In this document: positions 33,001 through 60,270 of the stretch, one piece after another
Layout: each line of letters begins with the position of its first letter
How positions within the stretch are numbered: the first letter of the stretch is position 1
Assembly: GCF_030028105.1 (NCBI RefSeq)
Contig: NC_092382.1
Location: 100,828,699 to 100,892,698, forward strand
DNA length: 64,000 nt
Source: Mobula birostris
Taxonomy: Eukaryota
Direction of reading: 5' to 3'
Made by a program: the position numbers and the translations under genes
The notes under the pieces: model-generated
What the model saw: the letters and a program-made list of their open reading frames with translations, nothing else
The model's database searches: none
Told to the model about the DNA's origin: nothing

Positions 33001-36000
33001 TCTACCTGTGCACTCTGATACCTGAATCCCCCACTACAGAAAACATCCTCTCCACATCCAATCTATCTGCGTCCTCTGGTCCTAGACTCCGCCGACTACA
33101 GGAAACATCCCCTCTACATCCACTCTATCTGTGTCCTCTGGTCCTAGATTCCCCCACTACAGGAACCATCCTCTGCACATCCACTCTATCTGTGTCCGCT
33201 GGTCCTAGGCTCCCCCACTACAGGAAACATCCTCTCTCATCCACTCTATCTGTGCCCTCTGATACAGAATCCCCCACTACAGGAAACATCCTCTCCGCAT
33301 CTTCCCTATCTGTGTCCTCTGGTCCGAGACTCCCCCAGTACAGGAAACATCCACTCCAAATCCACTCTACATGTGTCCTCTGGTCTTAGACTCCCCCCAC
33401 TACAGGAAACATCCTCTCCGCATCCACTCTATCTGTGCCCTCTGATACCAGACTCCCGCACTACAGGAAACATCCTCTCGGCATCCACTCTACCTATGTG
33501 CTCTGGTCAGAGACTCCCCCACTACAGGAAACATCCTCCCCGCATCCACTCTATCTGTGTCCTCTGGTCCTAGACTCCCCCACTACAGGAAACATCCTCT
33601 CCACATCCACTCTATCTGAGTTTTCTGGTCCTAAACTCCCCCCAACTATAGGAAACATCCTCTCCACATCCACTCTATCTGTGTCCTCTGGTCCTAGACT
33701 CCCCCCCACTATAGGAAACATCCTCTCCACATCCACTCTATCTGTGTCCTCTGGTCCTAGACTCCCCCACAATAGGAAACATCCTCTCCACATCCACTGT
33801 ATCTGCGCCCTCTGGGCCTAGACTCCCCTCCACTACAGGAAACAACCTCTCCACATCCACTCTATCTGTGTCCTCTTGTCCTAGACACCCGCACTACAGG
33901 AAACATCGTCTCCACATCCAGTCTATCTGTATCCTCTGGTCCTAGACTCCCCCACCATAGGAAACATCCTCTCCACGTCCTCTCTAACTGTGTCCTTTGG
34001 TCCTAAACTCCCCACTACAGTAAACATCCTCTCCACATCCACTCTATCTGTGTCCTGTAGTCCAAGATTCCACCACTATAGGAACCATCCTCTCCAAATC
34101 CATACTAACTGTGTCCTCTGGTCCCAGCCTCCCCCACCATAGGAAACATCCTCTCCACATCTACTCTATCTGTGTCCTCTGGTCCCAGACTCCCCCACTA
34201 CAAGAAACATCCTCTCCACATCCAATCTATCTGTGTCCTCTGGTCCTAGACTTCCCCGACTACAGGAAACATCCTCCCCACATCCACTCTATCTGTGTCC
34301 TCTGGACCTAGACTCCCCCACTACAGGAAACATCCCCTCCACATCCACACTATCTGTGTCCTCTGGTCCCAGACTCCCCCACTGCAGGAAACATCCTCTC
34401 CACTTCCAATCTATCTGTGTCCTCTGGTCCTGAACTCCGCCGACTGCAGGAAACATCCTCTCCACATCCACTCTATCTGAGTCTTCTGGTGCTAAACTCC
34501 CCCCAACTATAGGAAACATCCTCTCCACATCCACTCTATCTGCGTGCTCTGGTCCTAGACTCCCCCCCACTATAGGAAACATCCTCTCCACATCCGCTCT
34601 ATCTGTGTCCTCTGGTCCTAGACTCCCCCACAATAGGAAACATCCTCTCCACATCCACTCTATCTGTGCCCTCTGGCTCTAGACTCCCCTCCACTACAGG
34701 GAACAACCTCTCCGCATCCACTCTATCTGTGTCCTCTGGTCCTAGACTCCCCCACAATAGGAAACATCCTCTCCACATCCACTCTATCTGTGCCCTCTGG
34801 TCCTAGACTCCCCTCCACTACAGGAAACATCCTCTCCACATCTACTCTATCTGTGTCCTCTGGTCCCAGACTCCCCCACTACAAGAAACATCATCTCCAC
34901 ATTCAATCTATCTGCGTCCTCTGATCCTAGACTTCCCCGACTACAGGAAACATCCTCCCCACATCCACTCTATCTGTGTCCTCTGGTCTTAGACTCCCCC
35001 CACTACAGTAAACATTCTCTCCACATCCACTCTAACTGTGCCCTCTGATACCAGACTCCCGCACTACAGGAAACATCCTCTCGGCATCCACTCTACCTTT
35101 GTCGTCTGGTGCGAGACTCCCCCACTACAGGAAACATCCTCTCCACATCCACTCTATCTGAGTTTTCTGGTCCTAAACTCTCCCCAACTATAGGAAACAT
35201 CCTCTCCACATCCACTCTATCTGTGTTCTCTGGTCCTAGACTCCCGCACTACAGTAAACATCCTCTCCACATCCACTCCATCTGTGTCCTGTAGTCCTAG
35301 ATTCCACCACTATAGGAACCATCCTCTCCAAATCCATACTAACTGTGTCCTCTGGACCTAGCCTTCCCCACCATAGGAAACATCCTCTCCACATCTACTC
35401 TATCTGTGTCCTCTGGTCCCAGACTCCCCCACTACAAGAAACATCCTCTCCACATCCAATCTATCTGTGTCCTCTGGTCCTAGACTTCCCCGACTACAGG
35501 AAACATCCTCTCCACAACCAATCTATCTGTGTCCTCTGGTCCTAGACTCCGCCGACTACCGGAAACATTCTCTCCACATCCACTCTATCTGTGTCCTCTG
35601 GTCCTAGACTCCCCCACCATAGGAGACATCCTCTCCACGTCCTCTCTAACTGTGTCCTTTGGTCCTAGATTCCCCACTACAGTAAACATCCTCTCCACAT
35701 CTACTCTATCTGTGTCCTCTGGTCCCAGACTCCCCCACTACAAGAAACATCCTCTCCACATCCAATCTATCTGTGTCCTCTGGTCCTAGACTTCCCCGAC
35801 TACAGGAAACATCCTCCCCACATCCACTCTATCTGTGTCCTCTGGACCTAGACTCCCCCACTACAGGAAACATCCCCTCCACATCCACACTATCTGTGTC
35901 CTCTGGTCCCAGACTCCCCCACTGCAGGAAACATCCTCTCCACTTCCAATCTATCTGTGTCCTCTGGTCCTGAACTCCGCCGACTGCAGGAAACATCCTC

Positions 36001-39000
36001 TCCACATCCACTCTATCTGAGTCTTCTGGTGCTAAACTCCCCCCAACTATAGGAAACATCCTCTCCACATCCACTCTATCTGCGTGCTCTGGTCCTAGAC
36101 TCCCCTCCACTACAGGGAACAACCTCTCCGCATCCACTCTATCTGTGTCCTCTGGTCCTAGACTCCCCCACAATAGGAAACATCCTCTCCACATCCACTC
36201 TATCTGTGCCCTCTGGTCCTAGACTCCCCTCCACTACAGGAAACATCCTCTCCACATCTACTCTATCTGTGTCCTCTGGTCCCAGACTCCCCCACTACAA
36301 GAAACATCATCTCCACATTCAATCTATCTGCGTCCTCTGATCCTAGACTTCCCCGACTACAGGAAACATCCTCCCCACATCCACTCTATCTGTGTCCTCT
36401 GGTCTTAGACTCCCCCCACTACAGTAAACATTCTCTCCACATCCACTCTAACTGTGCCCTCTGATACCAGACTCCCGCACTACAGGAAACATCCTCTCGG
36501 CATCCACTCTACCTTTGTCGTCTGGTGCGAGACTCCCCCACTACAGGAAACATCCTCTCCACATCCACTCTATCTGAGTTTTCTGGTCCTAAACTCTCCC
36601 CAACTATAGGAAACATCCTCTCCACATCCACTCTATCTGTGTTCTCTGGTCCTAGACTCCCGCACTACAGTAAACATCCTCTCCACATCCACTCCATCTG
36701 TGTCCTGTAGGCCTAGATTCCACCACTATAGGAACCATCCTCTCCAAATCCATACTAACTGTGTCCTCTGGACCTAGCCTTCCCCACCATAGGAAACATC
36801 CTCTCCACATCTACTCTATCTGTGTCCTCTGGTCCCAGACTCCCCCACTACAAGAAACATCCTCTCCACATCCAATCTATCTGTGTCCTCTGGTCCTAGA
36901 CTTCCCCGACTACAGGAAACATCCTCTCCACAACCAATCTATCTGTGTCCTCTGGTCCTAGACTCCGCCGACTACCGGAAACATTCTCTCCACATCCACT
37001 CTATCTGTGTCCTCTGGTCCTAGACTCCCCCACCATAGGAAACATCCTCTCCACGTCCTCTCTAACTGTGTCCTTTGGTCCTAGATTCCCCACTACAGTA
37101 AACATCCTCTCCACATCCACACCATCTGGGTCTTCTGGTCCGAGACTCCCCCACTACAGGAAACGTCGTCTCAACATCCACTCTATCTGTGTCCTCTGGT
37201 CCTAGACTCCCCACTACAGGAAACATCCTCTCCGCATCCACTCTATCTGTGCCTCTGATACCAGAATCCCCCACTACAGGATACATCCTCTCCACATCCA
37301 ATCTATCTGCGTCCTCTGGTCCTAGATTCCCCCTCTACAGGAACCATTCTCTGCACATCCACTCTATCTGTGTCCGCTGGTCCGAGACTCCCCCACTACA
37401 GGAAACATCCTCTCCACATCCACTCTATCTGAGTTTTCTGGTCCTAAACTCCCCCCAACTATAGGAAACATCCTCTCCACATCCACTCTATCTGTGTCCT
37501 CTGGTCCTAGACTCCCCCCCACTATAGGAAACATCCTCTCCACATCCACTCTATCTGTGTCCTCTGGTCCTAGACTCCCCCACAATAGGAAACATCCTCT
37601 CCACATCCACTCTATCTGTGTCCTCTTGTCCCAGATTCCCCCACTACAGTAAACATCCTCTCCACATCCACTCCATCTGTGTCCTGTAGTCCTAGATTCC
37701 ACCACTATAGGAACCATCCTCTCTAAATCCATACTAACTGTGTCCTCTGGACCTAGCCTCCCCCACCATAGGAAACATCCTCTCCACATCTACTCTATCT
37801 ATGTCCTCTGGTCCCAGATTCCCCCACTACAAGAAACATCCTCTCCACATCCAATCTATCTGTGTCCTCTGGTCCTAGACTTCCCCGACTACAGGAAACA
37901 TCCTCCCCACATCCACTCTATCTGTGTCCTCTGGACCTAGACTCCCCCACTACAGGAAACATCCTCTCCACATCCAATCTATCTGTGTCCTCTGGTCCTA
38001 GACTCCCCACTACAGGAAACGTCGTCTCCACATCCACTCTATCTGTGTCCTCTGGTCCTAGACTCCTCCACTACTGGAAACATAGTCTCCACATCCCCTG
38101 TATCTGTGTCCTCTGGTCCTAGACTCCCCCACCACAGGAAACATCCCCTCTACATCCACTCTATCGGTGCCCTCTGGTCCTAGATTCCCCCACTACATGA
38201 ACCATGCTCTCCACATCCACTCTATCTGTGTCCTCTGGTCCTAGACTCCGCCCAGTACAGGAAACATCCTCTCCGCATCCAATCTATCTGTGTCCTCTGG
38301 TCCTAGACTCCGCCGACTACAGGAAACATCCTCTCCACATCCACTCAATCTGTGTCCTCTGTTCCTAGACTCCCCCACCATAGGAAACATCCTCTCCACG
38401 TCCTCTCTAACTGTGTCCTTTGGTCCTAGATTCCCCACTACAGTAAACATCCTCTCCACATCCACACCATTTGTGTCTTCTGGTCCTAGACTTCCCCACT
38501 ACAGGAAACGTCGTCTCCACATCCACTCTATCTGTGTCCTCTGGTCCTAGACTCCCCACTACAGGAAAGATCCTCTCCGCATCCACTCTATCTGTGCCCT
38601 CTGATACCAGAATCCCCCACTACAGGATACATCCTCTCCACATCCAATCTATCTGCGTCCTCTGGTCCTAGATTCCCCCTCTACAGGAACCATTCTCTGC
38701 ACAACCACTCTATCTGTGTCCGCTGGTCCGAGACTCCCCCACTACAGGAAACATCCTCTCCACATCCACTCTATCTGAGTTTTCTGGTCCTAAACTCCCC
38801 CCAACTATAGGAAACATCCTCTCCACATCCACTCTATCTGTGTCCTCTGGTCCTAGACTCCCCCCCACTATAGGAAACATCCTTTCCACATCCACTCTAT
38901 CTGTGTCCTCTAGTCCTAGACTTCCCCATAATAGGAAACATCCTCTCCACATCCACTCTATCTGTGCCCTCTGGTCCAAGACTCCCCTCCACTACAGGAA

Positions 39001-42000
39001 ACAAACTCTCCACATCCACTCTATCTGTGTCCTCTTGTCCTAGACTCCCGCACTACAGTAAACATCCTCTCCACATCCACTCCATCTGTGTCCTGTAGTC
39101 CTAGATTCCACCGCTATAGGAACCATCCTCTCCAAATCAATACTAACGGTGTCCTCTGGACCTAGCCTTCCCCACCATAGGAAACAACCTCTCCACATCT
39201 ACTCTATCTGTGTCCTCTGGTCCCAGACTCCCCCACTACAAGAAACATCCTCTCCACATCCAATCTATCTGTGTCCTCTGGTCCTAGACTTCCCCGACTA
39301 CAGGAAACATCCTCCCCACATCCACTCTATCTGTGTCCTCTGGACCTAGACTCCTCCACTACAGGAAACATCCCCTCCACATCCACTCTATCTGTGTCCT
39401 CTGGTCCCAGACTCCCGCACTACAGGAAACATCCTCTCCACAACCAATCTATCTGTGTCCTCTGGTCCTAGACTCCGCCGACTACAGGAAACATCCTCTC
39501 CACATCCACTCTATCTGTGTCCTCTGGTCCTAGACTCCCCCACCATAGGAAACATCCTCTCCACGTCCTCTCTAACTGTGTCCTTTGGTCCTAGATTCCC
39601 CACTACAGTAAACATCCTCTCCACATCCACACCATCTGTGTCTTCTTGTCCTAGACTCCCCCACTACAGGAAACGTCGTCTCCGCATCCACTCTATCTGT
39701 GTCCTCTGGTCCTAGACTCCCCACTACAGGTAACATCCTCTCCGCATCCACTCTATCTGTGCCCTCTGATACCAGAATCCCCCACTGCAGGAAGCATCCT
39801 CTCCACATCCAATTTATCTGCGTCATCTGGTCCTAGATTCCCCCACTACGGGAAATATCCTCTCCAAATCCACTCTACCTGTGTCCTCTGGACTTAGACT
39901 CCCCCCACTACAGTAAACATCCTCTCCGCATCCACTCTATCCGTGCGCTCTGATACCAGAATCCCCCACTACAGGAAATATCCTCTCCACATCCAATCTA
40001 TCTGCGTCCTCTGGTCCTAGATTCCACCACTACAGAAATATCCTCTCGAAATCCACTCTCCCTGTGTCCTCTGGTCTTCGACTCCCCCCACTACAGTAAA
40101 CATCCTCTCCGCATCCACTCTATCTGTGTCCTCTGATACCAGACTCCCGCACTACAGGAAACATCCTCTCGGCTTCTACTCTACCTTTGTCCTCTGGTCC
40201 GAGACTCCTCCACTACAGGAAACATCCTCTCCGCATCCACTCTATCTGTGTCCTCTGGTCCGAGTCTCCCCCACTACAGGAAACATCCTCTCCACATCCA
40301 CTCTATCTGAGTTTTCTGGTCCTAAACTCCCCCCAACTATAGGAAGCATCCTCTCCACATCCACTCTATCTGTGTCCTCTGGTCCTAGACTCCCCCCCAC
40401 TATAGGAAACATCCTCTCCACATCCACTCTATCTGTGTCCTCTGGTCCTAGACTCCCGCACAACAGGAAACATCCTCTCCACATCCACTCTATCTGTGTC
40501 CTCTGGTCCTAGACTCCCCTCCACTACAGGAAGCAACCTCTCCACATCCACTCTATCTGTGTCCTCTTGTCCTAGATTCCCGCACTACAGTAAACATCCT
40601 CTCCACATCCACTCCATCTGTGTCCTGTAGTCCTAGATTCCACCACTATAGGAACCATCCTCTCCAAATCCATACTAACTGTGTCCTCTGGACCTAGCCT
40701 CCCCCACCATAGGAAACATCCTCTCCACATCTACTCTATCTGTGTCCTCTGGTCCCAGACTCCCCCACTACAAGAAACATCCTCTCCACATCCAATCTAT
40801 CTGTGTCCTCTGGTCCTAGACTTCCCCGACTACAGGAAACATCCTCCCCACATCCACTCTATCTGTGTCCTCTGGACCTAGACTCCCCCACTACAGGAAA
40901 CATCCCCTCCACATCCACTCTATCTGTGTCCTCTGGTCCCAGACTCCCCTACTGCAGGAAACATCCTCTCCACATCCAATCTATCTGTGTCCTCAGGTCC
41001 TAGACTCCGTCGACTACAGGAAACATCCTCTCCACATCCACTCTATCTGTGTCCTCTGGTCCTAGACTCCCCCACCATAGTAAACATCCTCTCCACGTCC
41101 TCTCTAACTGTGTCCTTTGGCCCTAGATTCCCCACTACAGTAAACATCCTCTCCACATCCACACCATCTGTGTCCTCTGGTCCTAGACTCCCCCACTACA
41201 GGAAACGTCGTCTCCACATCCACTCTATCTGTGTCCTCTGGTCCTAGACAACCCCACTACTGGAAACATCGCCTCCACATCCCCGCTATCTGTGTCCTCT
41301 GGTCCTAGACTCCCCCACCACAGGAAACATCCCCTCTAGATCCACTCTATCTGTGCCCTCTGGTCCTAGATTCCCCCACTACATGAACCATGCTCTCCAC
41401 ATCCACTCTATCTGTGTTCTCTGGTCCTAGACTCCCCCACTACTGGAAACATCGTCTCTACATCCCCTCTATCTGTGTCCTCTGGTCCTAGACTCCCCAC
41501 TACAGGAAACATCCTCTCCGAATCCACTCTATCTGTGCCCTCTGATACCAGAATCTCCCACTACAGGTAACATCCTCTCCACAACCAATCTATCTGCGTC
41601 CTCTGGTCCTAGATTCCCCCACTACAGGAACCATTCTCTGCACATTCACTCTATCTGTGTCCGCTGGTCCTAGACTCCCCCACTACAGGAAACATCCCCT
41701 CTCATCCACTCTATCTGTGCCCTCTGATACAGAATCTCCCACTACAGGAAACATCCTCTCCGCATCCTCTCTATCTGTGTCCTCTGGTCCGAGACTCCTC
41801 CAGTACAGGAAACATCCTCTCCAAATCCACTCTACCTGTGTCCTCTGGTCTTAGACTCCCCCCACTACAGTAAACATCCTCTCCGCATCCACTCTATCTG
41901 TGCCCTCTGATACCAGACTCCCGCACTACAGGAAACATCCTCTCGGCATCCACTCTACCTTTGTCCTCTGGTCCGAGACTCCCCCACTACAGGAAACATC

Positions 42001-45000
42001 CTCTCCGCATCCACTCTATCTGTGTCCTCTGGTCCGAGACTCCCCCACTACCGGAAACATCCTCTCCACATCCACTCTATCTGAGTTTTCTGGTCCTAAA
42101 CTCCCCCCAACTATAGGAAACATCCTCTCCACATCCACTCTATCTGTGTCCTCTGGTCCTAGACTCCCCCCCACTATAGGAAACATCCTCTCCACATCCA
42201 CTCTATCTGTGTCCTCTGGTCCTAGACTCCCCCACAATAGGAAACATCCTCTCCACATCCAGTCTATCTGTGCCCTCTGGTCTTAGACTCCCCTCCACTA
42301 CAGGAAGCAACCTCTCCACATCCACTCTATCTGTGTCCTCTTGTCCTAGACTCCCGCACTACAGTAAACATCCTCTCCACATCCACTCCATCTGTGTCCT
42401 ATAGTCCTAGATTCCACCAGTATAGGAACCATCCTCTCCAAATCCATACTAATTGTGTCCTCTGGACCTAGCCTCCCCCACCATAGGAAACATCCTCTCC
42501 ACATCTACTCTATCTGTGTCCTCTGGTCCCAGACTCCCCCACTACAAGAAACATCCTCTCCACATCCAATCTATCTGTGTCCTCTGGTCCTAGACTTCCC
42601 CGACTACAGGAAACATCCTCCCCACATCCACTCTATCTGTGTCCTCTGGACCTCGACTCCCCCACTACAGGAAACATCCCCTCCACATCCACTCTATCTG
42701 TGTCCTCTGGTCCCAGACTCGCCCACTGCAGGAAACATCCTCTCCACATCCTATCTATCTGTGTCCTCTGGTCCTTGACTCCCCCACCATAGTAAACATC
42801 CTCTCCACGTCCTCTCTAACTGTGTCCTTTGTTCCTAGATTCCCACTACAGTAAACATCCTCTCCACATCCACACCATCTGTGTCCTCTGGTCCTAGACT
42901 CCCCCACTACAGGAAACGTCGTCTCCACATCCCCTCTATCTGTGTCCTCTGGTCCTAGACTCCCCCACCACAGGAAACATCCCCTCTACATCCAGTCTAT
43001 CTGTGCCCTCTGGTCCTAGATTCCCCCACTACATGAACCATGCTCTCCACATCCACTCTATCTGTGTCCTCTGGTCCTCGACTCCCCCCAGTACAGGAAA
43101 CATCCTCTCCGCATCCACTCTATCTGTGCACTCTGATACCTGAATCCCCCACTACAGAAAACATCCTCTCCACATCCAATCTATCTGCGTCCTCTGGTCC
43201 TAGACTCCGCCGACTACAGGAAACATCCCCTCTACATCCACTCTATCTGTGCCCTCTGGTCCTAGATTCCCCCACTACAGGAACCATCCTCTGCACATCC
43301 ACTCTATCTGTGTCCGCTGGTCCTCGGCTCCCCCACTACAGGAAACATCGCCTCTCATCCACTCTATCTGTGCCCTCTGATACAGAATCCCCCACTACAG
43401 GAAACATCCTCTCCGCATCTTCCCTACCTGTGTCCTCTGGTCCGAGACTCCCCCAGTACAGGAAACATCCACTCCAAATCCACTCTACCTGTATCCTCTG
43501 GTCTTAGACTCCCCCCACTACAGGAAACATCCTCTCCGCATCCACTCTACCTATGTGCTCTGGTCCGAGACTCCCCCACTTCAGGAAACATCCTCTCCGC
43601 ATCCACTCTATCTGTGTCCTCTGGTCCTAGACTCCCCCACTACAGGAAACATCCTCTCCACATCCACTCTATCTGAGTTTTCTGGTCCTAAACTCCCCCC
43701 AACTATAGGAAACATCCTCTCCACATCTACTCTATCTGTGTCCTCTGGTCCCAGACTCCCCCCCACTATAGGAAACATCCTCTCCACATCCAATCTATCT
43801 GTGTCCTCTGGTCCTAGACTTCCCCGACTACAGGAAACATCCTCCCCACATCCACTCTATCTGTGTCCTCTGGACCTAGACTCCCCCACTACAGGAAACA
43901 TCCCCTCCACATCCACTCTATCTGTGTCCTCTGGTCCCAGACTCCCCTACTGCAGGAAACATCCTCTCCACATCCAATCTATCTGTGTCCTCAGGTCCTA
44001 GACTCCGTCGACTACAGGAAACATCCTCTCCACATCCACTCTATCTGTGTCCTCTGGTCCTAGACTCCCCCACCATAGTAAACATCCTCTCCACGTCCTC
44101 TCTAACTGTGTCCTTTGGCCCTAGATTCCCCACTACAGTAAACATCCTCTCCACATCCACACCATCTGTGTCCTCTGGTCCTAGACTCCCCCACTACAGG
44201 AAACGTCGTCTCCACATCCACTCTATCTGTGTCCTCTGGTCCTAGACAACCCCACTACTGGAAACATCGCCTCCACATCCCCGCTATCTGTGTCCTCTGG
44301 TCCTAGACTCCCCCACCACAGGAAACATCCCCTCTAGATCCACTCTATCTGTGCCCTCTGGTCCTAGATTCCCCCACTACATGAACCATGCTCTCCACAT
44401 CCACTCTATCTGTGTTCTCTGGTCCTAGACTCCCCCACTACTGGAAACATCGTCTCTACATCCCCTCTATCTGTGTCCTCTGGTCCTAGACTCCCCACTA
44501 CAGGAAACATCCTCTCCGAATCCACTCTATCTGTGCCCTCTGATACCAGAATCTCCCACTACAGGTAACATCCTCTCCACAACCAATCTATCTGCGTCCT
44601 CTGGTCCTAGATTCCCCCACTACAGGAACCATTCTCTGCACATTCACTCTATCTGTGTCCGCTGGTCCTAGACTCCCCCACTACAGGAAACATCCCCTCT
44701 CATCCACTCTATCTGTGCCCTCTGATACAGAATCTCCCACTACAGGAAACATCCTCTCCGCATCCTCTCTATCTGTGTCCTCTGGTCCGAGACTCCTCCA
44801 GTACAGGAAACATCCTCTCCAAATCCACTCTACCTGTGTCCTCTGGTCTTAGACTCCCCCCACTACAGTAAACATCCTCTCCGCATCCACTCTATCTGTG
44901 CCCTCTGATACCAGACTCCCGCACTACAGGAAACATCCTCTCGGCATCCACTCTACCTTTGTCCTCTGGTCCGAGACTCCCCCACTACAGGAAACATCCT

Positions 45001-48000
45001 CTCCGCATCCACTCTATCTGTGTCCTCTGGTCCGAGACTCCCCCACTACCGGAAACATCCTCTCCACATCCACTCTATCTGAGTTTTCTGGTCCTAAACT
45101 CCCCCCAACTATAGGAAACATCCTCTCCACATCCACTCTATCTGTGTCCTCTGGTCCTAGACTCCCCCCCACTATAGGAAACATCCTCTCCACATCCACT
45201 CTATCTGTGTCCTCTGGTCCTAGACTCCCCCACAATAGGAAACATCCTCTCCACATCCAGTCTATCTGTGCCCTCTGGTCTTAGACTCCCCTCCACTACA
45301 GGAAGCAACCTCTCCACATCCACTCTATCTGTGTCCTCTTGTCCTAGACTCCCGCACTACAGTAAACATCCTCTCCACATCCACTCCATCTGTGTCCTAT
45401 TGTCCTAGATTCCACCAGTATAGGAACCATCCTCTCCAAATCCATACTAATTGTGTCCTCTGGACCTAGCCTCCCCCACCATAGGAAACATCCTCTCCAC
45501 ATCTACTCTATCTGTGTCCTCTGGTCCCAGACTCCCCCACTACAAGAAACATCCTCTCCACATCCAATCTATCTGTGTCCTCTGGTCCTAGACTTCCCCG
45601 ACTACAGGAAACATCCTCCCCACATCCACTCTATCTGTGTCCTCTGGACCTCGACTCCCCCACTACAGGAAACATCCCCTCCACATCCACTCTATCTGTG
45701 TCCTCTGGTCCCAGACTCGCCCACTGCAGGAAACATCCTCTCCACATCCTATCTATCTGTGTCCTCTGGTCCTTGACTCCCCCACCATAGTAAACATCCT
45801 CTCCACGTCCTCTCTAACTGTGTCCTTTGTTCCTAGATTCCCCACTACAGTAAACATCCTCTCCACATCCACACCATCTGTGTCCTCTGGTCCTAGACTC
45901 CCCCACTACAGGAAACGTCGTCTCCACATCCACTCTATCTGTGTCCTCTGGTCCTAGACTCCCCCACTACAGGAAACATCGTCTCCACATCCCCTCTATC
46001 TGTGTCCTCTGGTCCTAGACTCCCCCACCACAGGAAACATCCCCTCTACATCCAGTCTATCTGTGCCCTCTGGTCCTAGATTCCCCCACTACATGAACCA
46101 TGCTCTCCACATCCACTCTATCTGTGTCCTCTGGTCCTCGACTCCCCCAGTACAGGAAACATCCTCTCCGCATCCACTCTATCTGTGCACTCTGATACCT
46201 GAATCCCCCACTACAGAAAACATCCTCTCCACATCCAATCTATCTGCGTCCTCTGGTCCTAGACTCCGCCGACTACAGGAAACATCCCCTCTACATCCAC
46301 TCTATCTGTGCCCTCTGGTCCTAGATTCCCCCACTACAGGAACCATCCTCTGCACATCCACTCTATCTGTGTCCGCTGGTCCTCGGCTCCCCCACTACAG
46401 GAAACATCGCCTCTCATCCACTCTATCTGTGCCCTCTGATACAGAATCCCCCACTACAGGAAACATCCTCTCCGCATCTTCCCTACCTGTGTCCTCTGGT
46501 CCGAGACTCCCCCAGTACAGGAAACATCCACTCCAAATCCACTCTACCTGTATCCTCTGGTCTTAGACTCCCCCCACTACAGGAAACATCCTCTCCGCAT
46601 CCACTCTACCTATGTGCTCTGGTCCGAGACTCCCCCACTTCAGGAAACATCCTCTCCGCATCCACTCTATCTGTGTCCTCTGGTCCTAGACTCCCCCACT
46701 ACAGGAAACATCCTCTCCACATCCACTCTATCTGAGTTTTCTGGTCCTAAACTCCCCCCAACTATAGGAAACATCCTCTCCACATCCACTCTATCTGTGT
46801 CCTCTGGTCCTAGACTCCCCCCCACTATAGGAAACATCTTCTCCACATCCACTCTATCTGTGTCCTCTGGTCCTAGACTCCCCCACAATAGGAAACATCC
46901 TCTCCACATCCACTCTATCTGTGCCGTCTGGTCCTAGACTCCCCTCCACTACAGGAAACAACCTCTCCACATCCACTCTATCTGTGTCCTCTTGTCCTAG
47001 ACACCCGCACTACAGGAAACATCGTCTCCACATCCAATCTATCTGTGTCCTGTGGTCCTAGACTTCCCCGACTACAGGAAACATCCTCCCCACATCCACT
47101 CTATCTGTGTCCTCTGGACCTTGACTCCCCCACTACAGGAAACATCCCCTCCACATCCACTCTATCTGTGTCCTCTGGTCCCAGACTCCCCCACTGCAGG
47201 AAACATCCTCTCCACATCCAATCTATCTGTGTCCTCTGGTCCTAGACTCCCCCACCATAGTAAACATCCTCTCCACGTCCTCTCTAACTGTGTCCTTTGG
47301 TCCTAGATTCCCCACTACAGTAAACATCCTCTCCACATCCACACCATCTGTGTCCTCTGGTCCTAGACTCCCCCACTACAGGAAACGTCGTCTCCACATC
47401 CACTCTATCTGTGTCCTCTGGTCCTAGACTCCCCCACTACAGGAAACATCGTCTCCACATCCCCTCTATCTGTGTCCTCTGGTCCTAGACTCCCCCACCA
47501 CAGGAAACATCCCCTCTACATCCAGTCTATCTGTGCCCTCTGGTCCTAGATTTCCCCACTACATGAACCATGCTCTCCACATCCACTCTATCTGTGTCCT
47601 CTGGTCCTCGACTCCCCCCAGTACAGGAAACATCCTCTCCGCATCCACTCTATCTGTGCACTCTGATACCTGAATCCCCCACTACAGAAAACATCCTCTC
47701 CACATCCAATCTATCTGCGTCCTCTGGTCCTAGACCCCGCCGACTACAGGAAACATCCCCTCTACATCCACTCTATCTGTGTCCTCTGGTCCTAGATTCC
47801 CCCACTGCAGGAACCATCATCTGCACATCCACTCTATCTGTGTCCGCTGGTCCTAGGCTCCCCCACTACAGGAAACATCGCCTCTCATCCACTCTATCTG
47901 TGCCCTCTGATACAGAATCCCCCACTACAGGAAACATCCTCTCCGCATCTTCCCTATCTGTGTCCTCTGGTCCGAGACTCCCCCAGTACAGGAAACATCC

Positions 48001-51000
48001 ACTCCAAATCCACTCTACCTGTATCCTCTGGTCTTAGACTCCCCCCACTACAGGAAACATCCTCTCCGCATCCACTCTATCTGTGCCCTCTGATACCAGA
48101 CTCCCGCACTACAGGAAGACATCCTCTCGGCATCCACTCTACCTATGTGCTCTGGTCCGAGACTCCCCCACTACAGGAAACATCCTCTCCGCATCCACTC
48201 TATCTGTGTCCTCTGGTCCTAGACTCCCCCACTACAGGAAAACATCCTCTCCACATCCACTCTATCTGAGTTTTCTGGTCCTAAACTCCCCCCAACTATA
48301 GGAAACATCCTCTCCACATCCACTCTATCTGTGTCCTCTGGTCCTAGACTCCCCCCCACTATAGGAAAAATCCTCTCCACATCCACTCTATCTGTGTCCT
48401 CTGGTCCTAGACTCCCCCACAATAGGAAACATCCTCTCCACATCCACTCTATCTGTGCCCTCTGGTCCTAGACTCCCCTCCACTACAGGAAACAACCTCT
48501 CCACATCCACTCTATCTGTGTCCTCTTGTCCTAGACACCCGCACTACAGGAAACATCGTCTCCCCATCCAATCTATCTGTATCCTCTGGTCCTAGACTCA
48601 CCCCACCATAGGAAACATCCTCTCCACGTCCTCTCTAACTGTGTCCTTTGGTCCTAAACTCCCCACTACAGTAAATATCCTCTCCACATCCACTCCATCT
48701 GTGTCCTGTAGTCCAATATTCCACCACTATAGGAACCATCCTCTCCAAATCCATACTAACTGTGTCCTCTGGTCCCAGCCTCCCCCACCATAGGAAACAT
48801 CCTCTCCACATCTACTCTATCTGTGTCCTCTGGTCCCAGACTCCCCCACTACAAGAAGCATCCTCTCCACATCCAATCTCTCTGTGTCCTCTGGTCCTAG
48901 ACTTCCCCGACTACAGGAAACATCCTCCCCACATCCACTCTATCTGTGTCCTCTGGACCTAGACTCCCCCACTACAGGAAACATCCCCTCCACATCCACA
49001 CTATCTGTGTCCTCTGGTCCCAGACTCCCCCACTGCAGGAAACATCCTCTCCACATCCAATCTATCTGTGTCCTCTGGTCCTAGACTTCCCCGACTACAG
49101 GAAACATCCTCCCCACATCCACTCTATCTGTGTCCTCTGGACCTAGACTCCCCCACTACAGGAAACATCCCCTCCACATCCACACTATCTGTGTCCTCTG
49201 GTCCCAGACTCCCCCACTGCAGGAAACATCCTCTCCACTTCCAATCTATCTGTGTCCTCTGGTCCTGGACTCCGCCGACTGCAGGAAACATCCTCTCCAC
49301 ATCCACTCTATCTGAGTCTTCTGGTGCTAAACTCCCCCCAACTATAGGAAACATCCTCTCCACATCCACTCTATCTGCGTGCTCTGGTCCTAGACTCCCC
49401 CCCACTATAGGAAACATCCTCTCCACATCCGCTCTATCTGTGTCCTCTGGTCCTAGACTCCCCCACAATAGGAAACATCCTCTCCACATCCACTCTATCT
49501 GTGCCCTCTGGTCCTAGACTCCCCTCCACTACAGGGAACAACCTCTCCGCATCCACTCTATCTGTGTCCTCTGGTCCTGGACTCCCCCACAATAGGAAAC
49601 ATCCTCTCCACATCCACTCTATCTGTGCCCTCTGGTCCTAGACTCCCCTCCACTACAGGAAACATCCTCTCCACATCTACTCTATCTGTGTCCTCTGGTC
49701 CCAGACTCCCCCACTACAAGAAACATCATCTCCACATTCAATCTATCTGCGTCCTCTGGTCCTAGACTCCGCCGACTACAGGAAACATCCCCTCTACATC
49801 CACTCTATCTGTGTCCTCTGGTCCTAGATTCCCCCACTACAGGAACCATCCTCTGCACATCCACTCTATCTGTGTCCGCTGGTCCTATGCTCCCCCACTA
49901 CAGGAAACATCCCCTCTCATCCACTCCATCTGTGCCCTCTGATACAGAATCCCCCACTACAGGAAACATCCTCTCCGCATCTTCCCTATCTGTGTCCTCT
50001 GGTCCGAGACTCCCCCAGTACAGGAAACATCCACTCCAAATCCACTCTACCTGTGTCCTCTGGTCTTAGACTCCCCCACTACAGGAAACATCCTCTCCGC
50101 ATCCACTCTATCTGTGTCCTCTGGTCCTAGATTCCCCCAGAATAGGAAACATCCTCTCCACATCCACTCTATCTGTGCCCTCTGGTCCTAGACTCCCCTC
50201 CACTACAGGAAACAACCTCTCCACATCCACTCTATCTGTGTCCTCTTGTCCTAGACTCCCGCACTACAGGAAACATCGTCTCCACATCCAATCTATCTGT
50301 GTCCTCTGGTCCTGGACTCCCCCACCATAGGAAACATCCTCTCCACGTCCTCTCTAACCGTGTCCTTTGGTCCTAAACTCCCCCACTACAGTAAACATCC
50401 TCTCCACATCCACTCCATCTGTGTCCTGTAGTCCTAGATTCCACCACTATAGGAACCATCCTCTCCAAATCTATACTAACTGTGTCCTCTGGTCCCAGCC
50501 TCCCCCACCATAGGAAACATCCTCTCCGCATCCACTCTATCTGTGCCCTCTGATACCAGACTCCCGCACTACAGGAGACATCCTCTCGGCATCCACTCTA
50601 CCTTTGTCCTCTGGTCCGAGACTCCCCCACTACAGGAAACATCCTCTCCGCATGCACTGTATCTGTGTCCTCTGGTCCGAGACTCCCCCACTACAGGAAA
50701 CATCCTCTCCACATCCACTCTATCTGAGTTTTCTGGTCCTAATCTCCCCCCAACTATAGGAAACATCCTCTCCACATCCACTCTATCTGTGTCCTCTGGT
50801 CCTAGACTCCCCCCCACAATAGGAAACATCCTCTCCACATCCACTCTGTCTGTGCCCTCTGGTCCTAGACTCCCCTCCACTACAGGAAGCAACCTCTCCA
50901 CATCCACTCCATCTGTGTCCTGTAGTCCTAGATTCCACCACTATAGGAACCATCCTCTTCAAATCCATACTAACTGTGTCCTCTGGTCCTAGACTCCCCT

Positions 51001-54000
51001 CCACTACAGGAAACATCCTCTCCACATCTACTCTATCTGTGTCCTCTGGTCCCAGACTCCCCCACTACAAGAAACATCATCTCCACATTCAATCTATCTT
51101 TGTTTTCTGGTCCTAAATTCCCCCCGACTACAGGAAACATCCTCCCCACATCCACTCTATCTGTGTCCTCTGGACCTTGACTCCCCCACTACAGGAAACA
51201 TCCTCTCCACAACCAATCTATCTGTGTCCTCTGGTCCTAGACACCCCACCATAGGAAACATCCTCTCCACGTCCTCTCTAACTGTGTCCTTTGGTCCTTG
51301 ATTCCCCACTACAGTAAACATCCTCTCCACATCCACACCATCTGTGTCTTCTGGTCCTAGACTCTCCCACTACAGGAAACGTCGTCTCCACATCCAGTCT
51401 ATCTGTGTCCTCTGGTCCTAGACTCCCCACTACAGGAAACATCCCCTCCGCATCCACTCTATCTGTGCCCTCTGATACCAGAATCCCCCACTACAGGAAA
51501 CATCCTCTCCACATCCAATCTATCTGCGTCCTCTGGTCCTAGATTCCCCCACTACAGGAACCATCCTCTGCACATCCACTCTATCTGTGTCCGCTGGTCC
51601 TAGACTCCCCCACTACAGGAAACATCCTCTCTCATCCACTCTATCTGTGCCCTCTGATACAGAATCTCCCAATACAGGAAACATCCTCTCCGCATTCTCT
51701 CTATCTGTGTCCTCTGGTCCGAGACTCCCCCAGTACAGGAAACATCCTCTCCATCTGTGTCCTGTATTCCTAGATTCCACCACTATAGGAACCATCCTCT
51801 CCAAATCCATACTAACTGTGTCCTCTGATCCTAGCCTCCCCCACCATAGGAAACATCCTCTCCACATCTACTCTATCTGTGTCCTCTGGTCCCAGACTCC
51901 CCCACAATAGGAAACATCCTCTCCACATCCACTCTATCTGTGCCCTCTGGTCCTAGACTACCCTCCACTACAGGAAGCAACCTCTCCACATCCACTCTAT
52001 CTGTGTCCTCTGGTCCCAGACTCCCCCACTGCAGGAAACATCCTCTCCACATCCAATCTATTTGTGTCCTCTGGTCCTAGACTCCGCCGACTACAGGAAA
52101 CATCCTCTCCACATCCACTCTATCTGTGTCCTCTGGTCCTAGACTCCCCCACCAGAGTAAACATCCTCGCCACGTCCTCTCTAACTGTGTCCTTTGGTCC
52201 TAGATTCCCCACTACAGTAAACATCCTCTCCACATCCACACCATCTGTGTCCTCTGGTCCTAGACTCCCCCACTACAGGAAACGTCGTCTCCACATCCAC
52301 TCTATCTGTGTCCTCTGGTCCTAGACTCCCCCACTACTAGAAACATCGTCTCCACATCCCCTCTATCTGTGTCCTCTGGTCCTAGACTCCCCCACCACAG
52401 GAAACATCCCCTCTACATCCACTCTATCTGTGTCCTCTGGTCCCAGACTCCCCCACTGCAGGAAACATCCTCTCCACATCCAATCTATTGGTGTCCTCTG
52501 GTCCTAGACTCCGCCGACTACAGGAAACATCCTCTCCACATCCACTCTATCTGTGTCCTCTGGTCCTAGACTCCCCCACCATAGTAAACATCCTCTCCAC
52601 GTCCTCTCTAACTGTGTCCTTTGGTCCTAGATTCCCCACTACAGTAAACATCCTCTCCACATCCACACCATCTGTGTCCTCTGGTCTTAGACTCCCCCAC
52701 TACAGGAAACGTCGTCTCCACATCCACTCTATCTGTGTCCTCTGGTCCTAGACTCCCCCACTACTAGAAACATCGTCTCCACATCCCCTCTATCTGTGTC
52801 CTCTGGTCCTAGACTCCCCCACCACAGGAAACATCCCCTCTACATCCACTCTATCTGTGCCCTCTGGTCCTAGATTCCCCCACTACATGAACCATGCTCT
52901 CCACATCCACTCTATCTGTGTCCTCTGGTCCTAGACTCCCCCCAGTACAGGAAACATCCTCTCCGCATCCAATCTATCTGTGTCCTCTGGTCCTAGACTC
53001 CGCCGACTACAGGAAACATCCTCTCCACATCCACTCTATCTGTGTCCTCTGGTCCTTGACTCCCCCACCATAAGAAACATCCTCTCCACGTCCTCTCTAA
53101 CTGTGTCCTTTGGTCCTACATTCCCCACTACAGTAAACATCCTCTCCACATCCACACCATCTGTGTCTTCTGGTCCTAGACTCCCCCACTACAGGAAACG
53201 TCGTCTCCACATCCACTCTATCTGTGTCATCTGGTCCTAGACTCCCCCACTACGGGAAACATCCCCTCTCATCCACTCTATCTGTGCCCTCTGATACAGA
53301 ATCTCCCACTACAGGAAACATCCTCTCCGCATCCTCTCTATCTGTGTCCTCTGGTCCGAGACTCCTCCAGTACAGGAAACATCCTCTCCAAATCCACTCT
53401 ACCTGTGTCCTCTGGTCTTAGACTCCCCCCACTACAGTAAACATCCTCTCCGCATCCACTCTATCTGTGCCCTCTGATACCAGACTCCCGCACTACAGGA
53501 AACATCCTCTCGACATCCACTGTACCTTTGTCCTCTGGTCCGAGACTCCCTCACTACAGGAAACATCCTCTCCGCATCCACTCTATCTGTGTCCTCTGGT
53601 CCGAGACTCCCCAACTACAGGAAACATCCTCTCCACATCCACTCTATCTGAGTTTTCTGGTCCTAAACTCCCCTCAACTATAGGAAACATCCTCTCCACA
53701 TCCACTCTATCTGTGTCCTCTGGTCCTAGACTCCCCCCCACTATAGGAAACATCCTCTCCACATCCACTCTATCTGTGTCCTCCGGTCCTAGACTCCCCC
53801 ACAATAGGAAACATCCTCTCCACATCCACTCTATCTGTGCCCTCTGGTCCTAGACTACCCTCCACTACAGGAAGCAACCTCTCCTCATCCACTCTATCTG
53901 TGTCCTCTTGTCCTAGACTCCCGCAATACAGTAAACATCCTCTCCACATCCACTCCATCTGTGTCCTGTAGTCCTAGATTCCACCACTATAGGAACCATC

Positions 54001-55371
54001 CACTCCAAATCCATACTAACTGTGTCCTCTGGACCTAGCCTCCCCCACCATAGGAAACATCCTCTCCACGTCTACTCTATCTGTGTCCTCTGGTCCCAGA
54101 CTCCCCCACTACAAGAAACATCCTCTCCACATCCAATCTATCTGTGTCCTCTGGTCCTAGACTTCCCCGACTACAGGAAACATCCTCCCCACATCCACTC
54201 TATCTGTGTCCTCTGGACCTAGACTCCCCCACTACAGGAAACATCCCCTCCACATCCACTCTATCTGTGTCCTCTGGTCCCAGACTCCCCTACTGCAGGA
54301 AACATCCTCTCCACATCCAATCTATCTGTGTCCTCTGGTACTAGACTCCGCCGACTACAGGAAACATCCTCTCCACATCCACTCTATCTGTGTCCTCTGG
54401 TCCTAGACTCCCCCACCATAGTAAACATCCTCTCCACGTCCTCTCTAACTGTGTCCTTTGGTCCTAGACTCCGCCACTACTGGAAACATCCTCTCCACAT
54501 CCACTCTATCTGTGTCCTCTGGTCCTAGACTCCCCCATTATAGGAAACATCCCCTCCACATCCACTCTATCTGTGTCCTCTAGTCCCAGACTCCCCTACT
54601 GCAGGAAACATCCTCTCCACATCCAATCTATCTGTGTCCTCTGGTCCTAGACTCCCCCCAACTATAGGAAACATCCTCTGCGCATCCACTCTATCTGTGT
54701 CCTCTGGTCCTAGACTCCGCCACTACTGGAAACATCCTCTCCACATCCACTCTATCTGTGTCCTCTGGTCCCAGACTCCCCCGCTACAGGAAACATCCTC
54801 TCCACATCCAATCTATCTGTGTCCTCTGGTCCTAGACTCCCCCGACTATAGGAAACATCCTCTCCAGATCCACTCTATCTGGGTCCTCTGGTCCTAGACT
54901 CCCCCACTACAAGAAACATCCCCTCCACATCCACACTATCTGTGTCCTCTGGTCCTAGACTCCCCCACTACAGGAAACGTCGTCTCCACATCCACTCTAG
55001 CTGTGTCCTCTGGTCCTAGACTCCCCCACTACAGGACACATCGTCTCTACATCCACTCTATCTTTGTCCTCTGGTCCTACACTCCCCCACTGCAGGAAAC
55101 ATCCCCTCCACATCCACTCTATCTGTGTCCTCTGGTCCTAGACTCCCCCAATACAGGAAACATTCTCTCCACATCCACTCTATCTGTGTCCTCTGGTCGT
55201 AGACTCCCCCACCATAGGAAACATCCTCTCCACATCCACTCTATCTGTGCCCTCTGGTTGTAGTCTCCCCCACTGTAGGAAACATCCTCTCCACCTTCAC
55301 TCTATCTGTGTCCTCTGTTCCTAGACTCCCCCCCCCACTATAGGAAACATCCTCTCCACTTCCACTCTATC
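1..55371. repeat. Tandem satellite array, ~61-bp monomer (59-63 bp), ~900 copies, open at the left edge
   Basis: The motif GGAAACATCCTCTCCACATCCACTCTATCTGTGTCCTCTGGTCCTAGACTCCCCCACTACA recurs without interruption (e.g. GGAAAC at 57 and 118). Length varies mainly in the C-run after GACT. The last monomer ends at ...TCCACTCTATC (55371). The plus strand is C-rich and G-poor. Confidence 0.99.
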
Positions 55372-55537
55372 GAGGCCTTTTATTATTCAATAGGTTTCAA
55401 CGAGATCCCTCCTCATTCTTCTATACTCCAACGAGTACAGGTCCAGATCCATTGAAAGCTGCTTATACGTTAACCCTTTCATTCCCGGTATCCGTCTCGT
55501 GACCCTCCTCTCGAATGCCTGCACGGCCTTTCTTAAA
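55372..55537 (-). mobile_element. 5'-truncated CR1-clade LINE ORF2 C-terminal remnant, contiguous with the satellite
   Basis: The minus strand translates as LRKAVQAFERRVTRRIPGMKGLTYKQLSMDLDLYSLEYRRMRRDLVETY*IIKGLDRVEVERMFPIVG. This matches the CR1 ORF2 C-terminal motif (LYSLE.RR.RGDLIE.YKI.KG.DRVD). There is an in-frame TGA at 55387-55389, and the frame continues into the first satellite monomer. Confidence 0.9.
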
Positions 55538-55572
55538 CAAGAGAAAATCTGCAGATGCTGGAAATCCAGAGC

Positions 55573-55610
<38 letters not shown>

Positions 55611-55690
55611 GTTGAAAAGAACTAAGCACGCCAGAAGACATCTACGGAAAAGAATACAGTCAACATTTTGGGCCGAGCCTTTTCGTCAGA
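55538..55690 (-). mobile_element. Penelope-like element terminal fragment with decayed hammerhead-like core and internal (CA)n
   Basis: The minus strand reads CTGACGAAAAGGCTCGGCCCAAAATGTTGACTG, resembling the CTGATGA-stem-CCGAAACG motif of Penelope-like termini. The flanks AAAATCTGCAGATGCTGGAAATCC...AACACACAC resemble a common elasmobranch repeat (recalled, not searched). Confidence 0.45.
55574..55606. repeat. (AC)n microsatellite
   Basis: Pure AC run of about 16 units. Confidence 0.97.
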
Positions 55691-55769
55691 AGTATTCTTA
55701 GTCTCTAAGATACATCTTTTCTTTGATAAATTTCCAACTCGTGCCTTCTCTGCGTTCGCACGCTCGGTG

Positions 55770-56110
55770 CTGTGTCGTATGTCGTTGGCGATCGTGCTCT
55801 TGGCATTTTTTTTTCTTCAGAAGTGGTTTGCCATCGCCTTCTTCTGGGCAGTGTGTCTTTACAAAACAGCTGTGCCCAGCATTATCAATACTCTTCAGGG
55901 CTTGACTGCCTGGGGTCAGTCCGGGACATGTGATATATGCACCGGCTGCTCCTACGACCATCCACCACCTGCTCCCAAGGTTTCACGCCACCTTGATCGG
56001 GGGGTGTGGGTGGGGGGGTGGTGCAGGGTGTTTGCTCAGCCCAAGCGTGATCTGCAGACCAGCGGAGGAAAGGAATGCCTGACACTTCCTTACCTCCAGC
56101 CCGCCCTGTC
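55770..56110 (-). mobile_element. Probable RTE-related LINE/SINE 3' fragment
   Basis: The minus strand contains AGAAGAAGGCGATGGCAAACCACTTCTGAAG, similar to the GAAGGCAATGGCAA(A/C)CCACT motif of RTE/Bov-A-related repeats. Boundaries are approximate. Confidence 0.4.
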
Positions 56111-56510: not shown

Positions 56511-56537
56511 CTCCGACTCCGCCTCGTCACCTGTACA

Positions 56538-56998: not shown

Positions 56999-57035
<37 letters not shown>

Positions 57036-59750: not shown

Positions 59751-60270
59751 TGTTCTGGTCACCGAATGATAGGAAAGATGTCAATGGAATTGAGAGAGCA
59801 CAGCGGAGGTTTACTGAAATGTTGCCTGGGTTTCATCTCCTAACTCACAGAGAAAGGTTGAACAAGTTAGATCTTTATTCTCTGTAGCGTAGAAGGTTGA
59901 GGGGGAACTTGATAGAGGTGTTTAAAATTATGAGGGGGATTGATAGAGATGACGTGGATAGGCTTTTTCCATTGAGAGTGGGGGAGATTCAAACAGGAGG
60001 ACATGAGTTGAGAGTAAAAGGGCAAAAGTTTAGGGGTAACACGAGGGGGAAATTCTTTACTCAGAGAGTGGTGGCTGTGTGGAACGAGAAGTGGCTGGGG
60101 CAGGTTCGATGTTGTCGTTTAAAGTTATATTGAGTAGATATATGGACAGGAAAGGAATGGAGGGTTATGGGCTGAGTGAAGGTCGGTGGGAGTATTTGTA
60201 AGTAAGAGTTCGGCACGGACTAGAAGGGCCGAGATGGCCTGTTTCTGTGCTGTAATTGCTTTATGGTTAT
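59751..60270 (+). mobile_element. 5'-truncated CR1 LINE 3' end (ORF2 C-terminus plus 3'UTR), a different subfamily from the satellite parent
   Basis: Translates as LYSL*RRRLRGNLIEVFKIMRGIDRDDVDRLFPLRVGEIQTGGHELRVKGQKFRGNTRGKFFTQRVVAVWNE. The 3'UTR ends GGGCCGAGATGGCCTGTTTCTGTGCTGTAATTG..TATGGTTAT (CR1-type hairpin and tail). Confidence 0.9.

What the first reader, a model, noticed from the sequence alone, without database searches (positions are those of the whole stretch)
55250..55537. A >55-kb satellite still attached in frame to the CR1 LINE it appears to derive from
Seen: the reverse complement of the monomer (GATAGAGTGGATGTGGAGAGGATGTTTCCT[A/G]TAGTGGGGGAGTCTAGGACCAGAGGACACA) encodes DRVDVERMFP[I/V]VGESRTRGH. 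The CR1 remnant reads ...DLVETY*IIKGL and continues directly into DRVEVERMFPIVG, the first monomer, with no break in frame. An independent CR1 copy at 59942-60008 aligns to the monomer (GATAGAGATGACGTGGATAGGCTTTTTCC...GTGGGGGAGATTCAAACAGGAGGACATGAG). Established: TE fragments can seed satellites. Inference: one 61-bp piece of a CR1 ORF2 was amplified in place about 900-fold or more, and the founding 5' flank survives. The origin of a satellite is rarely this directly visible.
Basis: partly seen in the sequence, partly recalled or inferred. Interest (0 to 1): 0.88.

Follow-up and report, generated by a model that had tools for sequence, protein, structure and literature searches.

The report
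LINE-derived satellite abutting its parent-type element
A tandem array of more than 55 kb is built from a 61-bp piece of a CR1-type jumping gene and runs seamlessly into the preceding part of such an element, a clear but not unprecedented case of a mobile element seeding a satellite, with birth at this exact spot plausible but unproven.

Summary
Window 1-55371 is one uninterrupted array of about 904 units of 61 bp. On the minus strand, 55372 to about 55540 is the ORF2 C-terminal coding sequence of a 5'-truncated CR1-group LINE. It passes colinearly into the first unit. Full LINE ORF2 proteins with endonuclease and RT domains align across the junction in a single match.

The unit consensus equals the majority sequence of this CR1 family in public reads at 60 of 61 positions, so CR1 ancestry is secure.

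Birth in place, with the founder flank surviving, is the simplest reading. The junction is colinear. The roughly 90 units next to it are old and unhomogenised, while the interior holds nested young duplications, including an exact 2 x 12,690 bp repeat. The flank's divergence is similar to that of the units.

It is not shown, for three reasons:
- The far end lies outside the window.
- Contigs with the same unit-to-unit junction occur in at least two other species.
- An unverified earlier scan note places a second array of this satellite on the other side of TRBC.

Homologous recombination with a resident CR1, or a CR1 copy that already carried tandem units, would give the same junction.

Satellites derived from LINE ORF2, and from CR1 specifically, are already described. 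This is a new member of a known kind, of moderate interest.

The parts
1..55371 (-). Satellite array, about 904 units of 61 bp (some of 60, 62 or 63 bp). CR1 sense is on the minus strand. The array runs off the left end of the window.
   Evidence: TRF. Cyclic alignment. Unit length spectrum. No CR1 flank sequence or other insert inside the array.
55372..55540 (-). 5'-truncated fragment of a CR1-group LINE ORF2 C-terminal coding region, colinear with the first unit. The 5' end is approximate, somewhere in 55525-55545.
   Evidence: Translation. BLASTP to P0092 residues 760-797. tblastn HSPs crossing the junction. CR1 family contigs pile up here and show the flank's private differences at 55381, 55383, 55384, 55389, 55401 and 55448.
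55387..55389 (-). In-frame TGA inside the CR1 remnant. The family majority has CGA here, so this is CpG decay.
   Evidence: Loose-end consensus of CR1 contigs.
55307..55371 (-). First unit at the junction, 65 bp, with a 4-base G-run insertion and the CR1-type A at unit position 31.
   Evidence: Most public contigs lack the 4 extra bases (table 4).
49900..55371 (-). Old, poorly homogenised edge zone, roughly the first 90 units.
   Evidence: Nearest-neighbour and 10-unit block identities.
18634..44026 (.). Perfectly periodic stretch made of two exact copies of a 12,690-bp block of units. Either a very recent duplication or an assembly artefact.
   Evidence: Exact run of 12,703 bp at offset 12,690. 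Block identity 1.0 at a lag of 207 units.
59756..60270 (+). Independent CR1-group 3' fragment of a different subfamily. It shows what normally follows the unit (GHELRVKGQKFRG...).

Best explanation
A copy of a CR1-group LINE, 5'-truncated and on the minus strand, lay downstream of a TCR-beta-type V segment. A 61-bp internal piece of its ORF2 3' coding region was duplicated head to tail; this piece encodes DRVDVERMFP(I/V)VGESRTRGH. The duplication junction is ...ACACA|GATAGAG..., with at most one base of microhomology.

The short tandem then grew by unequal exchange or replication-based segmental duplication, mostly in the array interior. That left nested young duplications of about 1.5, 3, 5.6 and 12.69 kb inside, and old diverged units at the edge. 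The 170 bp of CR1 at 55372-55540 is the part of the parent element that preceded the first unit.

Shown: the CR1 ancestry of the unit, the colinear junction, the old edge and the young interior.

Inferred: that the amplification started in this very copy at this locus, and the mechanism of the first duplication.

The array is most likely selectively neutral DNA.
For: 1. The array exists and is pure.

2. One HSP of APE+RT LINE ORF2 proteins crosses the junction.

3. Public contigs of several species give the CR1 family sequence on both sides of the unit. Upstream they read ...GDLIETYRMLKGL and downstream GHSLRIEGRPFRT. The family majority inside the unit equals the satellite consensus except at position 31, which is A in CR1 and G/A in the array, and A in the first three units.

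4. The edge units are orphans, matching their nearest neighbour at 54-60 of 61 positions against a median of 61 of 61. Block identity rises from 0.91 at the edge to 1.00 inside. So the junction is old and not a recent rearrangement.

5. Flank divergence from the family majority is about 8 differences in about 166 bp. That is the same order as the divergence of units from their consensus, 7.6%.

6. There is no TE insertion in 55 kb of a genome type where CR1-group elements alone make up 22-34% (PMC13343379). This fits ongoing turnover.
Against: 1. The far end of the array is not in the window. The predicted CR1 3' remainder and target-site duplication are untested.

2. Contigs from two other organisms (runs X28 and X30) and from an RNA library of the same organism (X19) span unit-to-unit boundaries with 5-12 mismatches. 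A single-unit CR1 would give 19-25. The tandem form is therefore not private to this genome. The unique flank at 55758 has no coverage in those species, so an orthologous locus was not seen.

3. That note is unverified.

4. A 61-bp homology allows a secondary, in-register junction by recombination.

5. The run that holds the junction best (X1) is probably the sample the window was assembled from. No listed contig bridges 55371/55372, so the junction has no independent read support.
Confidence: 0.5

Rival explanations
1. Secondary junction. The satellite arose from some other CR1 copy or locus. A resident CR1 copy lying next to or inside the array then recombined, or was gene-converted, with a unit through the shared 61-bp homology. 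This deleted the CR1 3' part and produced an in-register junction that mimics a founder flank.
For: - The tandem form is present in other species.
- A second array is likely nearby.
- CR1-group elements make up 22-34% of elasmobranch genomes, so a same-family copy next to any array is likely (PMC13343379).
- The flank looks slightly less diverged (about 5%) than the units (7.6%).
Against: - It needs an extra event on only 61 bp of roughly 92% homology.
- The edge units are old, so any such event was not recent.
- The difference in divergence is within sampling error for 166 bp.
Confidence: 0.2
2. The tandem was carried by the element. A CR1 variant already held two or more 61-bp units, made by RT template jumping or in a master copy. 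It retrotransposed, seeded short tandems at several loci and in several species, and one of them expanded here. The flank then belongs to the seeding copy, but the first duplication did not happen in place.
For: - Unit-to-unit junction contigs occur in other species and in RNA, with word depth up to 367 in X19.
- An unrelated metagenome contig, L001, holds a 228-bp x 2.8 tandem of the same CR1 ORF2 3' region. This part of CR1 therefore forms tandems repeatedly.
- This route is frequent for plant LTR elements (PMC7004042).
Against: - No CR1 copy with 2-5 units was observed directly.
- RNA libraries can contain DNA, and depth sums over many copies (caveats).
- L001 is only about 69% identical and has a different unit, so it is analogy and not the same event.
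Confidence: 0.2
3. Assembly artefact. The junction or the array length is a product of repeat mis-assembly.
For: - An exact 2 x 12,690 bp repeat is what a collapsed or looped assembly graph can produce.
- No listed contig bridges 55371/55372.
Against: - The edge units are individually distinct and grade into the array.
- A chimeric join would not be in register with CR1.
- Contigs with zero mismatches cover 55466-55557 and 55648-55757 in X1.
Confidence: 0.04

Closest known systems
Chicken HinfI (SCR1) repeat containing CR1 sequence (Li and Leung 2006, as summarised in PMC9659126)
   Same: A tandem repeat that holds part of CR1, including a partial ORF2 coding region.
   Different: There the unit includes the CR1 3' UTR as well as the partial coding region (PMC9659126). 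Here the unit is only a 61-bp piece of ORF2, the host is a cartilaginous-fish-type genome, and a colinear CR1 flank is seen at the array edge.
PROsat (Phodopus) and Pvc20 (harbour seal), satellites related to LINE-1 ORF2 (table in PMC9659126)
   Same: Satellite monomers derived from a LINE ORF2 coding segment.
   Different: The LINE clade differs (L1). The review's table gives no parent-element flank in register for those cases.
Retrotransposon-derived tandem repeats in plants (PMC7004042; maize centromeric retrotransposon tandem repeats, PMC3648361; potato Sobo, cited in PMC9659126)
   Same: Arrays that arise from an internal piece of a retroelement and expand. Sobo is a recently amplified satellite repeat (title only, as cited in PMC9659126; its single-locus nature is my own recollection).
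   Different: Those come from LTR elements, mostly from non-coding or LTR parts. I took only titles and abstracts from these papers.
Classical higher-order-repeat satellites such as primate alpha satellite (general knowledge)
   Same: Old diverged units at array edges, and a young homogenised interior.
   Different: There is no regular HOR period here. The lag profile is nearly flat. The structure is nested irregular segmental duplications. No centromere link is known.

Membership tests
TE-derived satellite DNA | Long head-to-tail array of one monomer | tested here: met
   903-904 units at 1-55371, uninterrupted.
TE-derived satellite DNA | Monomer homologous to an internal segment of a transposable element | tested here: met
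   The consensus equals the CR1 family majority at 60 of 61 positions. It aligns to an independent CR1 copy at z = 6.5. The peptide matches CR1-type proteins. An HSP crosses the junction.
TE-derived satellite DNA | High genomic abundance or several arrays (the classical sense of 'satellite') | tested here: inconclusive
   Summed contig depth cannot separate CR1 copies from units. A second array is suggested only by an unverified note. A metagenome scan for the junction 26-mer gave 0 hits, which is uninformative.
Satellite born in situ inside its parent element | Parent sequence colinear with the array on the 5' side | tested here: met
Satellite born in situ inside its parent element | Rest of the parent element (CR1 3' part, tail, target-site duplication) at the other end of the array | not testable with these tools
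   The array runs off the window at position 1, and neighbouring windows cannot be read.
Satellite born in situ inside its parent element | No older arrays elsewhere; related species show a single-unit parent at the orthologous site | tested here: inconclusive
   The tandem junction is present in organisms G and K, but the locus is unknown. Position 55758 has zero depth in those runs.
CR1-group LINE (for the flank) | Homology to the C-terminal region of an ORF2 that has APE and RT domains | tested here: met
   P0092 and P0149 carry Exo_endo_phos_2 and RVT_1. They match the flank at E about 1e-9.
CR1-group LINE (for the flank) | Placement within CR1 proper versus L2 or Zenon by RT phylogeny; CR1-type 3' end | not tested
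   The RT domain and the 3' end are absent from this fragment. 'CR1' is used here in the group sense (PMC13343379).
Higher-order-repeat satellite | Regular multi-monomer period | tested here: not met
   Identity by lag is 0.86-0.876, with only weak peaks at 22-25 units. The blocks have irregular offsets.

The most novel reading that the evidence does not exclude
One founding duplication inside a CR1 copy in the TCR-beta locus of an ancestral elasmobranch produced a locus-bound satellite. It has persisted at the same place in several species and now separates V segments from the D-J-C region, with a second block beyond TRBC. It may act on locus architecture or recombination, for example as a spacer or chromatin boundary.
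Probability: 0.06. Interest if true: 0.7.

Novelty: new member of a known kind. Interest (0 to 1): 0.38.

Why it matters
If the far end confirms it, this would be a clean, base-resolved example of a LINE coding fragment turning into an array of more than 55 kb. The founder flank, the duplication junction (at most 1 base of microhomology) and the growth history (old edge, nested young duplications) would all be readable. That is useful as a teaching case and for models of satellite birth.

It also places a very large tandem array inside an antigen-receptor locus, next to a V segment with an intact 23-RSS. That may interest people studying locus contraction and V(D)J recombination in cartilaginous fish. 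It does not change the current understanding of how satellites arise.

Tried and rejected
1. Sharing of 21-26% of the satellite's 31-mers with seven or more other organisms looked at first like proof of a widespread satellite. Laying contigs showed that most of this comes from ordinary CR1 copies. Only the boundary-spanning contigs count.

2. Two protein hits with 7-12 repeated matches (P0004, P0013) looked like other CR1-derived arrays. P0013 turned out to be a bacterial Cna_B repeat protein, so that match is spurious; P0004 was not examined and I assumed it is spurious in the same way.

3. I searched the protein collection with an ORF from the array, hoping to find other arrays through predicted proteins. 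There were no hits.

4. I searched with the neighbouring V segment to fetch orthologous loci. There were no candidates.

5. A metagenome scan for the unit-junction 26-mer gave 0 hits.

6. Copy number from contig depth was rejected. Depth sums over all contigs and multi-placed pieces, and it falls steeply across the flank because of the likeness filter.

7. There is no gradient of the CR1-type A at unit position 31 towards the edge beyond the first three units.

8. Rfam finds nothing in 55000-64000. The idea that the abundant repeat at 55526-55700 is a hammerhead-type element got no support.

Full report
**What is in the sequence**

Tandem Repeats Finder reports one array at 1-55371 with period 61, 903.4 copies and 85% matches. 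A cyclic alignment of the whole array to its consensus gives 904 units.
- Mean identity to the consensus is 92.4%, and pairwise identity between units is about 86%.
- Unit lengths are mostly 61 bp, with many of 60, 62 and 63 bp caused by a variable G run.
- No unit departs by more than 12 differences. Neither the CR1 flank sequence nor the CR1 sequences that normally lie on either side of the unit occur anywhere inside the array. It is therefore 55 kb of pure units with no inserted element.
- The array runs off the left end of the window.

**The junction**

On the minus strand the frame reads ...RKAVQAFERRVTRRIPGMKGLTYKQLSMDLDLYSLEYRRMRRDLVETY*IIKGL and then DRVEVERMFPIVG. The D codon starts at 55371, exactly the last base of the array.
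- The 50-residue piece before the stop matches residues 760-797 of P0092 at E = 1e-9.
- P0092 and P0149 were found with the independent CR1 fragment of this window as the query. Both carry the Pfam domains Exo_endo_phos_2 and RVT_1, so they are complete LINE ORF2 proteins.
- In tblastn each gives a single HSP that starts in the flank and ends inside the first unit. P0092 760-815 matches 55503 to 55336, and P0149 837-901 matches 55524 to 55330.
- The second CR1 fragment, on the + strand at about 59756-60270, aligns with the unit at 46 of 67 columns, z = 6.5. It shows what normally follows the unit.

'In frame' simply reflects DNA colinearity. The remnant has an in-frame TGA at 55389-55387, and a 4-base G insertion shifts the frame in the first unit.

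**Evidence from public runs**

Only one laying of reads was allowed. It covered 54950-56000 with one DNA run of the source organism (X1), DNA runs of two other organisms (X30 and X28) and one RNA run of the source organism (X19).

Tens of thousands of short contigs pile up on the units in all four runs. Their loose ends give the family sequence on both sides of the unit. Upstream this translates as GDLIETYRMLKGL and downstream as (GH)SLRIEGRPFRT. Three things follow.
- The unit is a segment of a very abundant CR1 family shared by several species. This explains most of the 21-26% of satellite 31-mers held by seven or more other organisms.
- The family majority inside the unit equals the satellite consensus. 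The one exception is unit position 31, which is A in CR1 and G (73%) or A (26%) in the array.
- The flank is a decayed copy. It differs from the majority at 55381, 55383, 55384, 55389, 55401, 55448 and probably 55372. That is about 8 differences in about 166 bp. The TGA stop comes from a CGA.

CR1-group elements make up 22-34% of elasmobranch genomes (PMC13343379). I use 'CR1' in that group sense. The RT domain needed to tell CR1 proper from L2 or Zenon is not present in this fragment.

**History written in the array**

Interior units nearly always have an identical twin elsewhere in the array; the median nearest-neighbour match is 61 of 61. The first roughly 15 units next to the CR1 flank match their nearest relative at only 54-60 of 61.

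The best identity of a 10-unit block to any other block is 0.91-0.93 for most of the first roughly 90 units. It rises to 0.99-1.00 further in.

The interior holds nested duplications.
- Window 18634-44026 is perfectly periodic with a period of 12,690 bp and zero differences.
- There are exact runs of 1,629 bp at an offset of 2,998.
- There are near-exact blocks at offsets of about 5.5-5.9 kb and about 1.4-1.5 kb.
- There is no regular higher-order period.

This is the usual picture of growth and homogenisation by unequal exchange in the interior, with an old, frozen edge. The CR1 junction is therefore an old boundary and not a recent rearrangement. The exact 12.69-kb repeat may instead be an assembly artefact, so the true array length is uncertain.

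**Was it born here?**

Arguments for:
- The colinear junction, which chance juxtaposition cannot give.
- The old edge.
- Flank and units of similar divergence (about 5% and 7.6%).
- The CR1-type base at position 31 in the first three units, which is only a weak hint.

Arguments against, or limits:

(a) The other end of the array cannot be read, so the predicted CR1 3' remainder and target-site duplication are untested.

(b) Contigs of X28, X30 and the RNA run X19 span unit-to-unit boundaries by 15-39 bases on each side with 5-12 mismatches. A normal single-unit CR1 laid on the same intervals would give 19-25. The tandem form therefore exists in at least two other species. At the unique flank position 55758 those runs have zero depth, so I saw no orthologous locus.

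(c) Earlier scan notes show that windows are spaced 62,000 bases apart (note 4). That fits exactly positions 1-36,300 of the window two steps to the left. I could not verify this.

(d) Two other routes give the same junction. One is homologous exchange between an existing array and a resident CR1 copy. The other is a CR1 copy that already carried tandem units when it inserted. The second gets some indirect support. An unrelated metagenome contig, L001, carries a 228-bp x 2.8 tandem of the same ORF2 3' region, so this part of CR1 has formed tandems more than once.

I put birth in place with the surviving founder flank at about 0.5. The two alternatives get about 0.2 each, and an assembly artefact a few percent.

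**Mechanism**

The unit boundary reads ...ACACA|GATAGAG.... In CR1 the first sequence is followed by GCCTCAG and the second is preceded by GGCCTT. At most one base (G) is shared. This points to an end-joining or template-switch type of first duplication, and not to slippage between longer repeats. That step is inferred. Later growth by unequal exchange or segmental duplication is read directly from the nested repeats.

I see no sign of function. The sense strand is G-rich (39% G, 12% C) and CpG-poor.

**Comparison with what is known**

Satellites that derive from transposable elements, including LINE ORF2 segments, are reviewed in PMC9659126. Examples are PROsat and Pvc20 from L1, and the chicken HinfI repeat from CR1 itself. 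Frequent origin of arrays from retrotransposon-internal tandem repeats is documented in plants (PMC7004042, PMC3648361). I found no paper on a CR1-derived satellite in cartilaginous fish.

The finding is a new member of a known kind. It is a tidy example and sits in an unusual place, the TCR-beta locus, but it is not a new principle.

**Context**

The minus strand carries two V-set ORFs, at 56568-56900 and 62733-63035 (Pfam V-set, E = 2.7e-12 and 5e-8). The first ends ...YFCAWS and is followed by CACAGTG, a 23-base spacer and ACAAAAACT. The array begins about 1.2 kb downstream of that recombination signal.

Between the CR1 fragment and the V segment lie other very abundant repeats, at 55526-55700 and 55814-55993. 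Rfam recognises nothing there.

Noticed in passing
window 56537-56900 (minus strand) and 62733-63035 (minus strand): Two TCR-beta-like V segments (Pfam V-set). The first ends YFCAWS and has an intact 23-RSS: CACAGTG, a 23-base spacer, then ACAAAAACT. The satellite starts about 1.2 kb downstream of this RSS.
   Followed up: partly
window 18634-44026: An exact tandem duplication of a 12,690-bp block of satellite units, with zero differences over 25.4 kb. Either a very recent event or an assembly artefact. The array length should not be trusted until long reads confirm it.
   Followed up: partly
window 55526-55700 (+ strand as read), including the (AC)n run at 55574-55606: A short repeat that is extremely abundant in all four runs laid (word depth about 0.9-1.4 million in the DNA runs) abuts the 5' truncation point of the CR1 fragment. 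Its right part resembles a decayed minimal hammerhead core on the minus strand, but Rfam gives no match.
   Followed up: partly
window 55814-55993: Another high-copy repeat, shared by the other species' runs, with loose ends at 55854 and 55935. Not identified.
   Followed up: no
L001:205-846 (ENA metagenome contig, sample ERZ27276711): A 228-bp x 2.8 tandem repeat built from the same C-terminal ORF2 region of a distant CR1-type element, about 69% identical in DNA. The gene caller read it as a 123-aa protein (P0001).
   Followed up: partly
window 55095-55273, RNA run X19: Contigs from an RNA library of the source organism span unit-to-unit boundaries with word depth up to 367, while single-copy flank bins have zero depth. 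This may mean the satellite is transcribed, but DNA carry-over is not excluded.
   Followed up: no
window 55758: A G/A difference at half the depth (2 of 4) in run X1. Probably a heterozygous site in the sequenced individual.
   Followed up: no
same genome, other pieces (earlier notes s1-145148, s1-145272, s1-146354): First readers noted three other large arrays that seem to emerge from inside a Penelope tail or LTRs, with parent sequence on the flanks. If these hold, TE-internal amplification into arrays of tens of kb is recurrent in this genome. All three notes are unverified.
   Followed up: no
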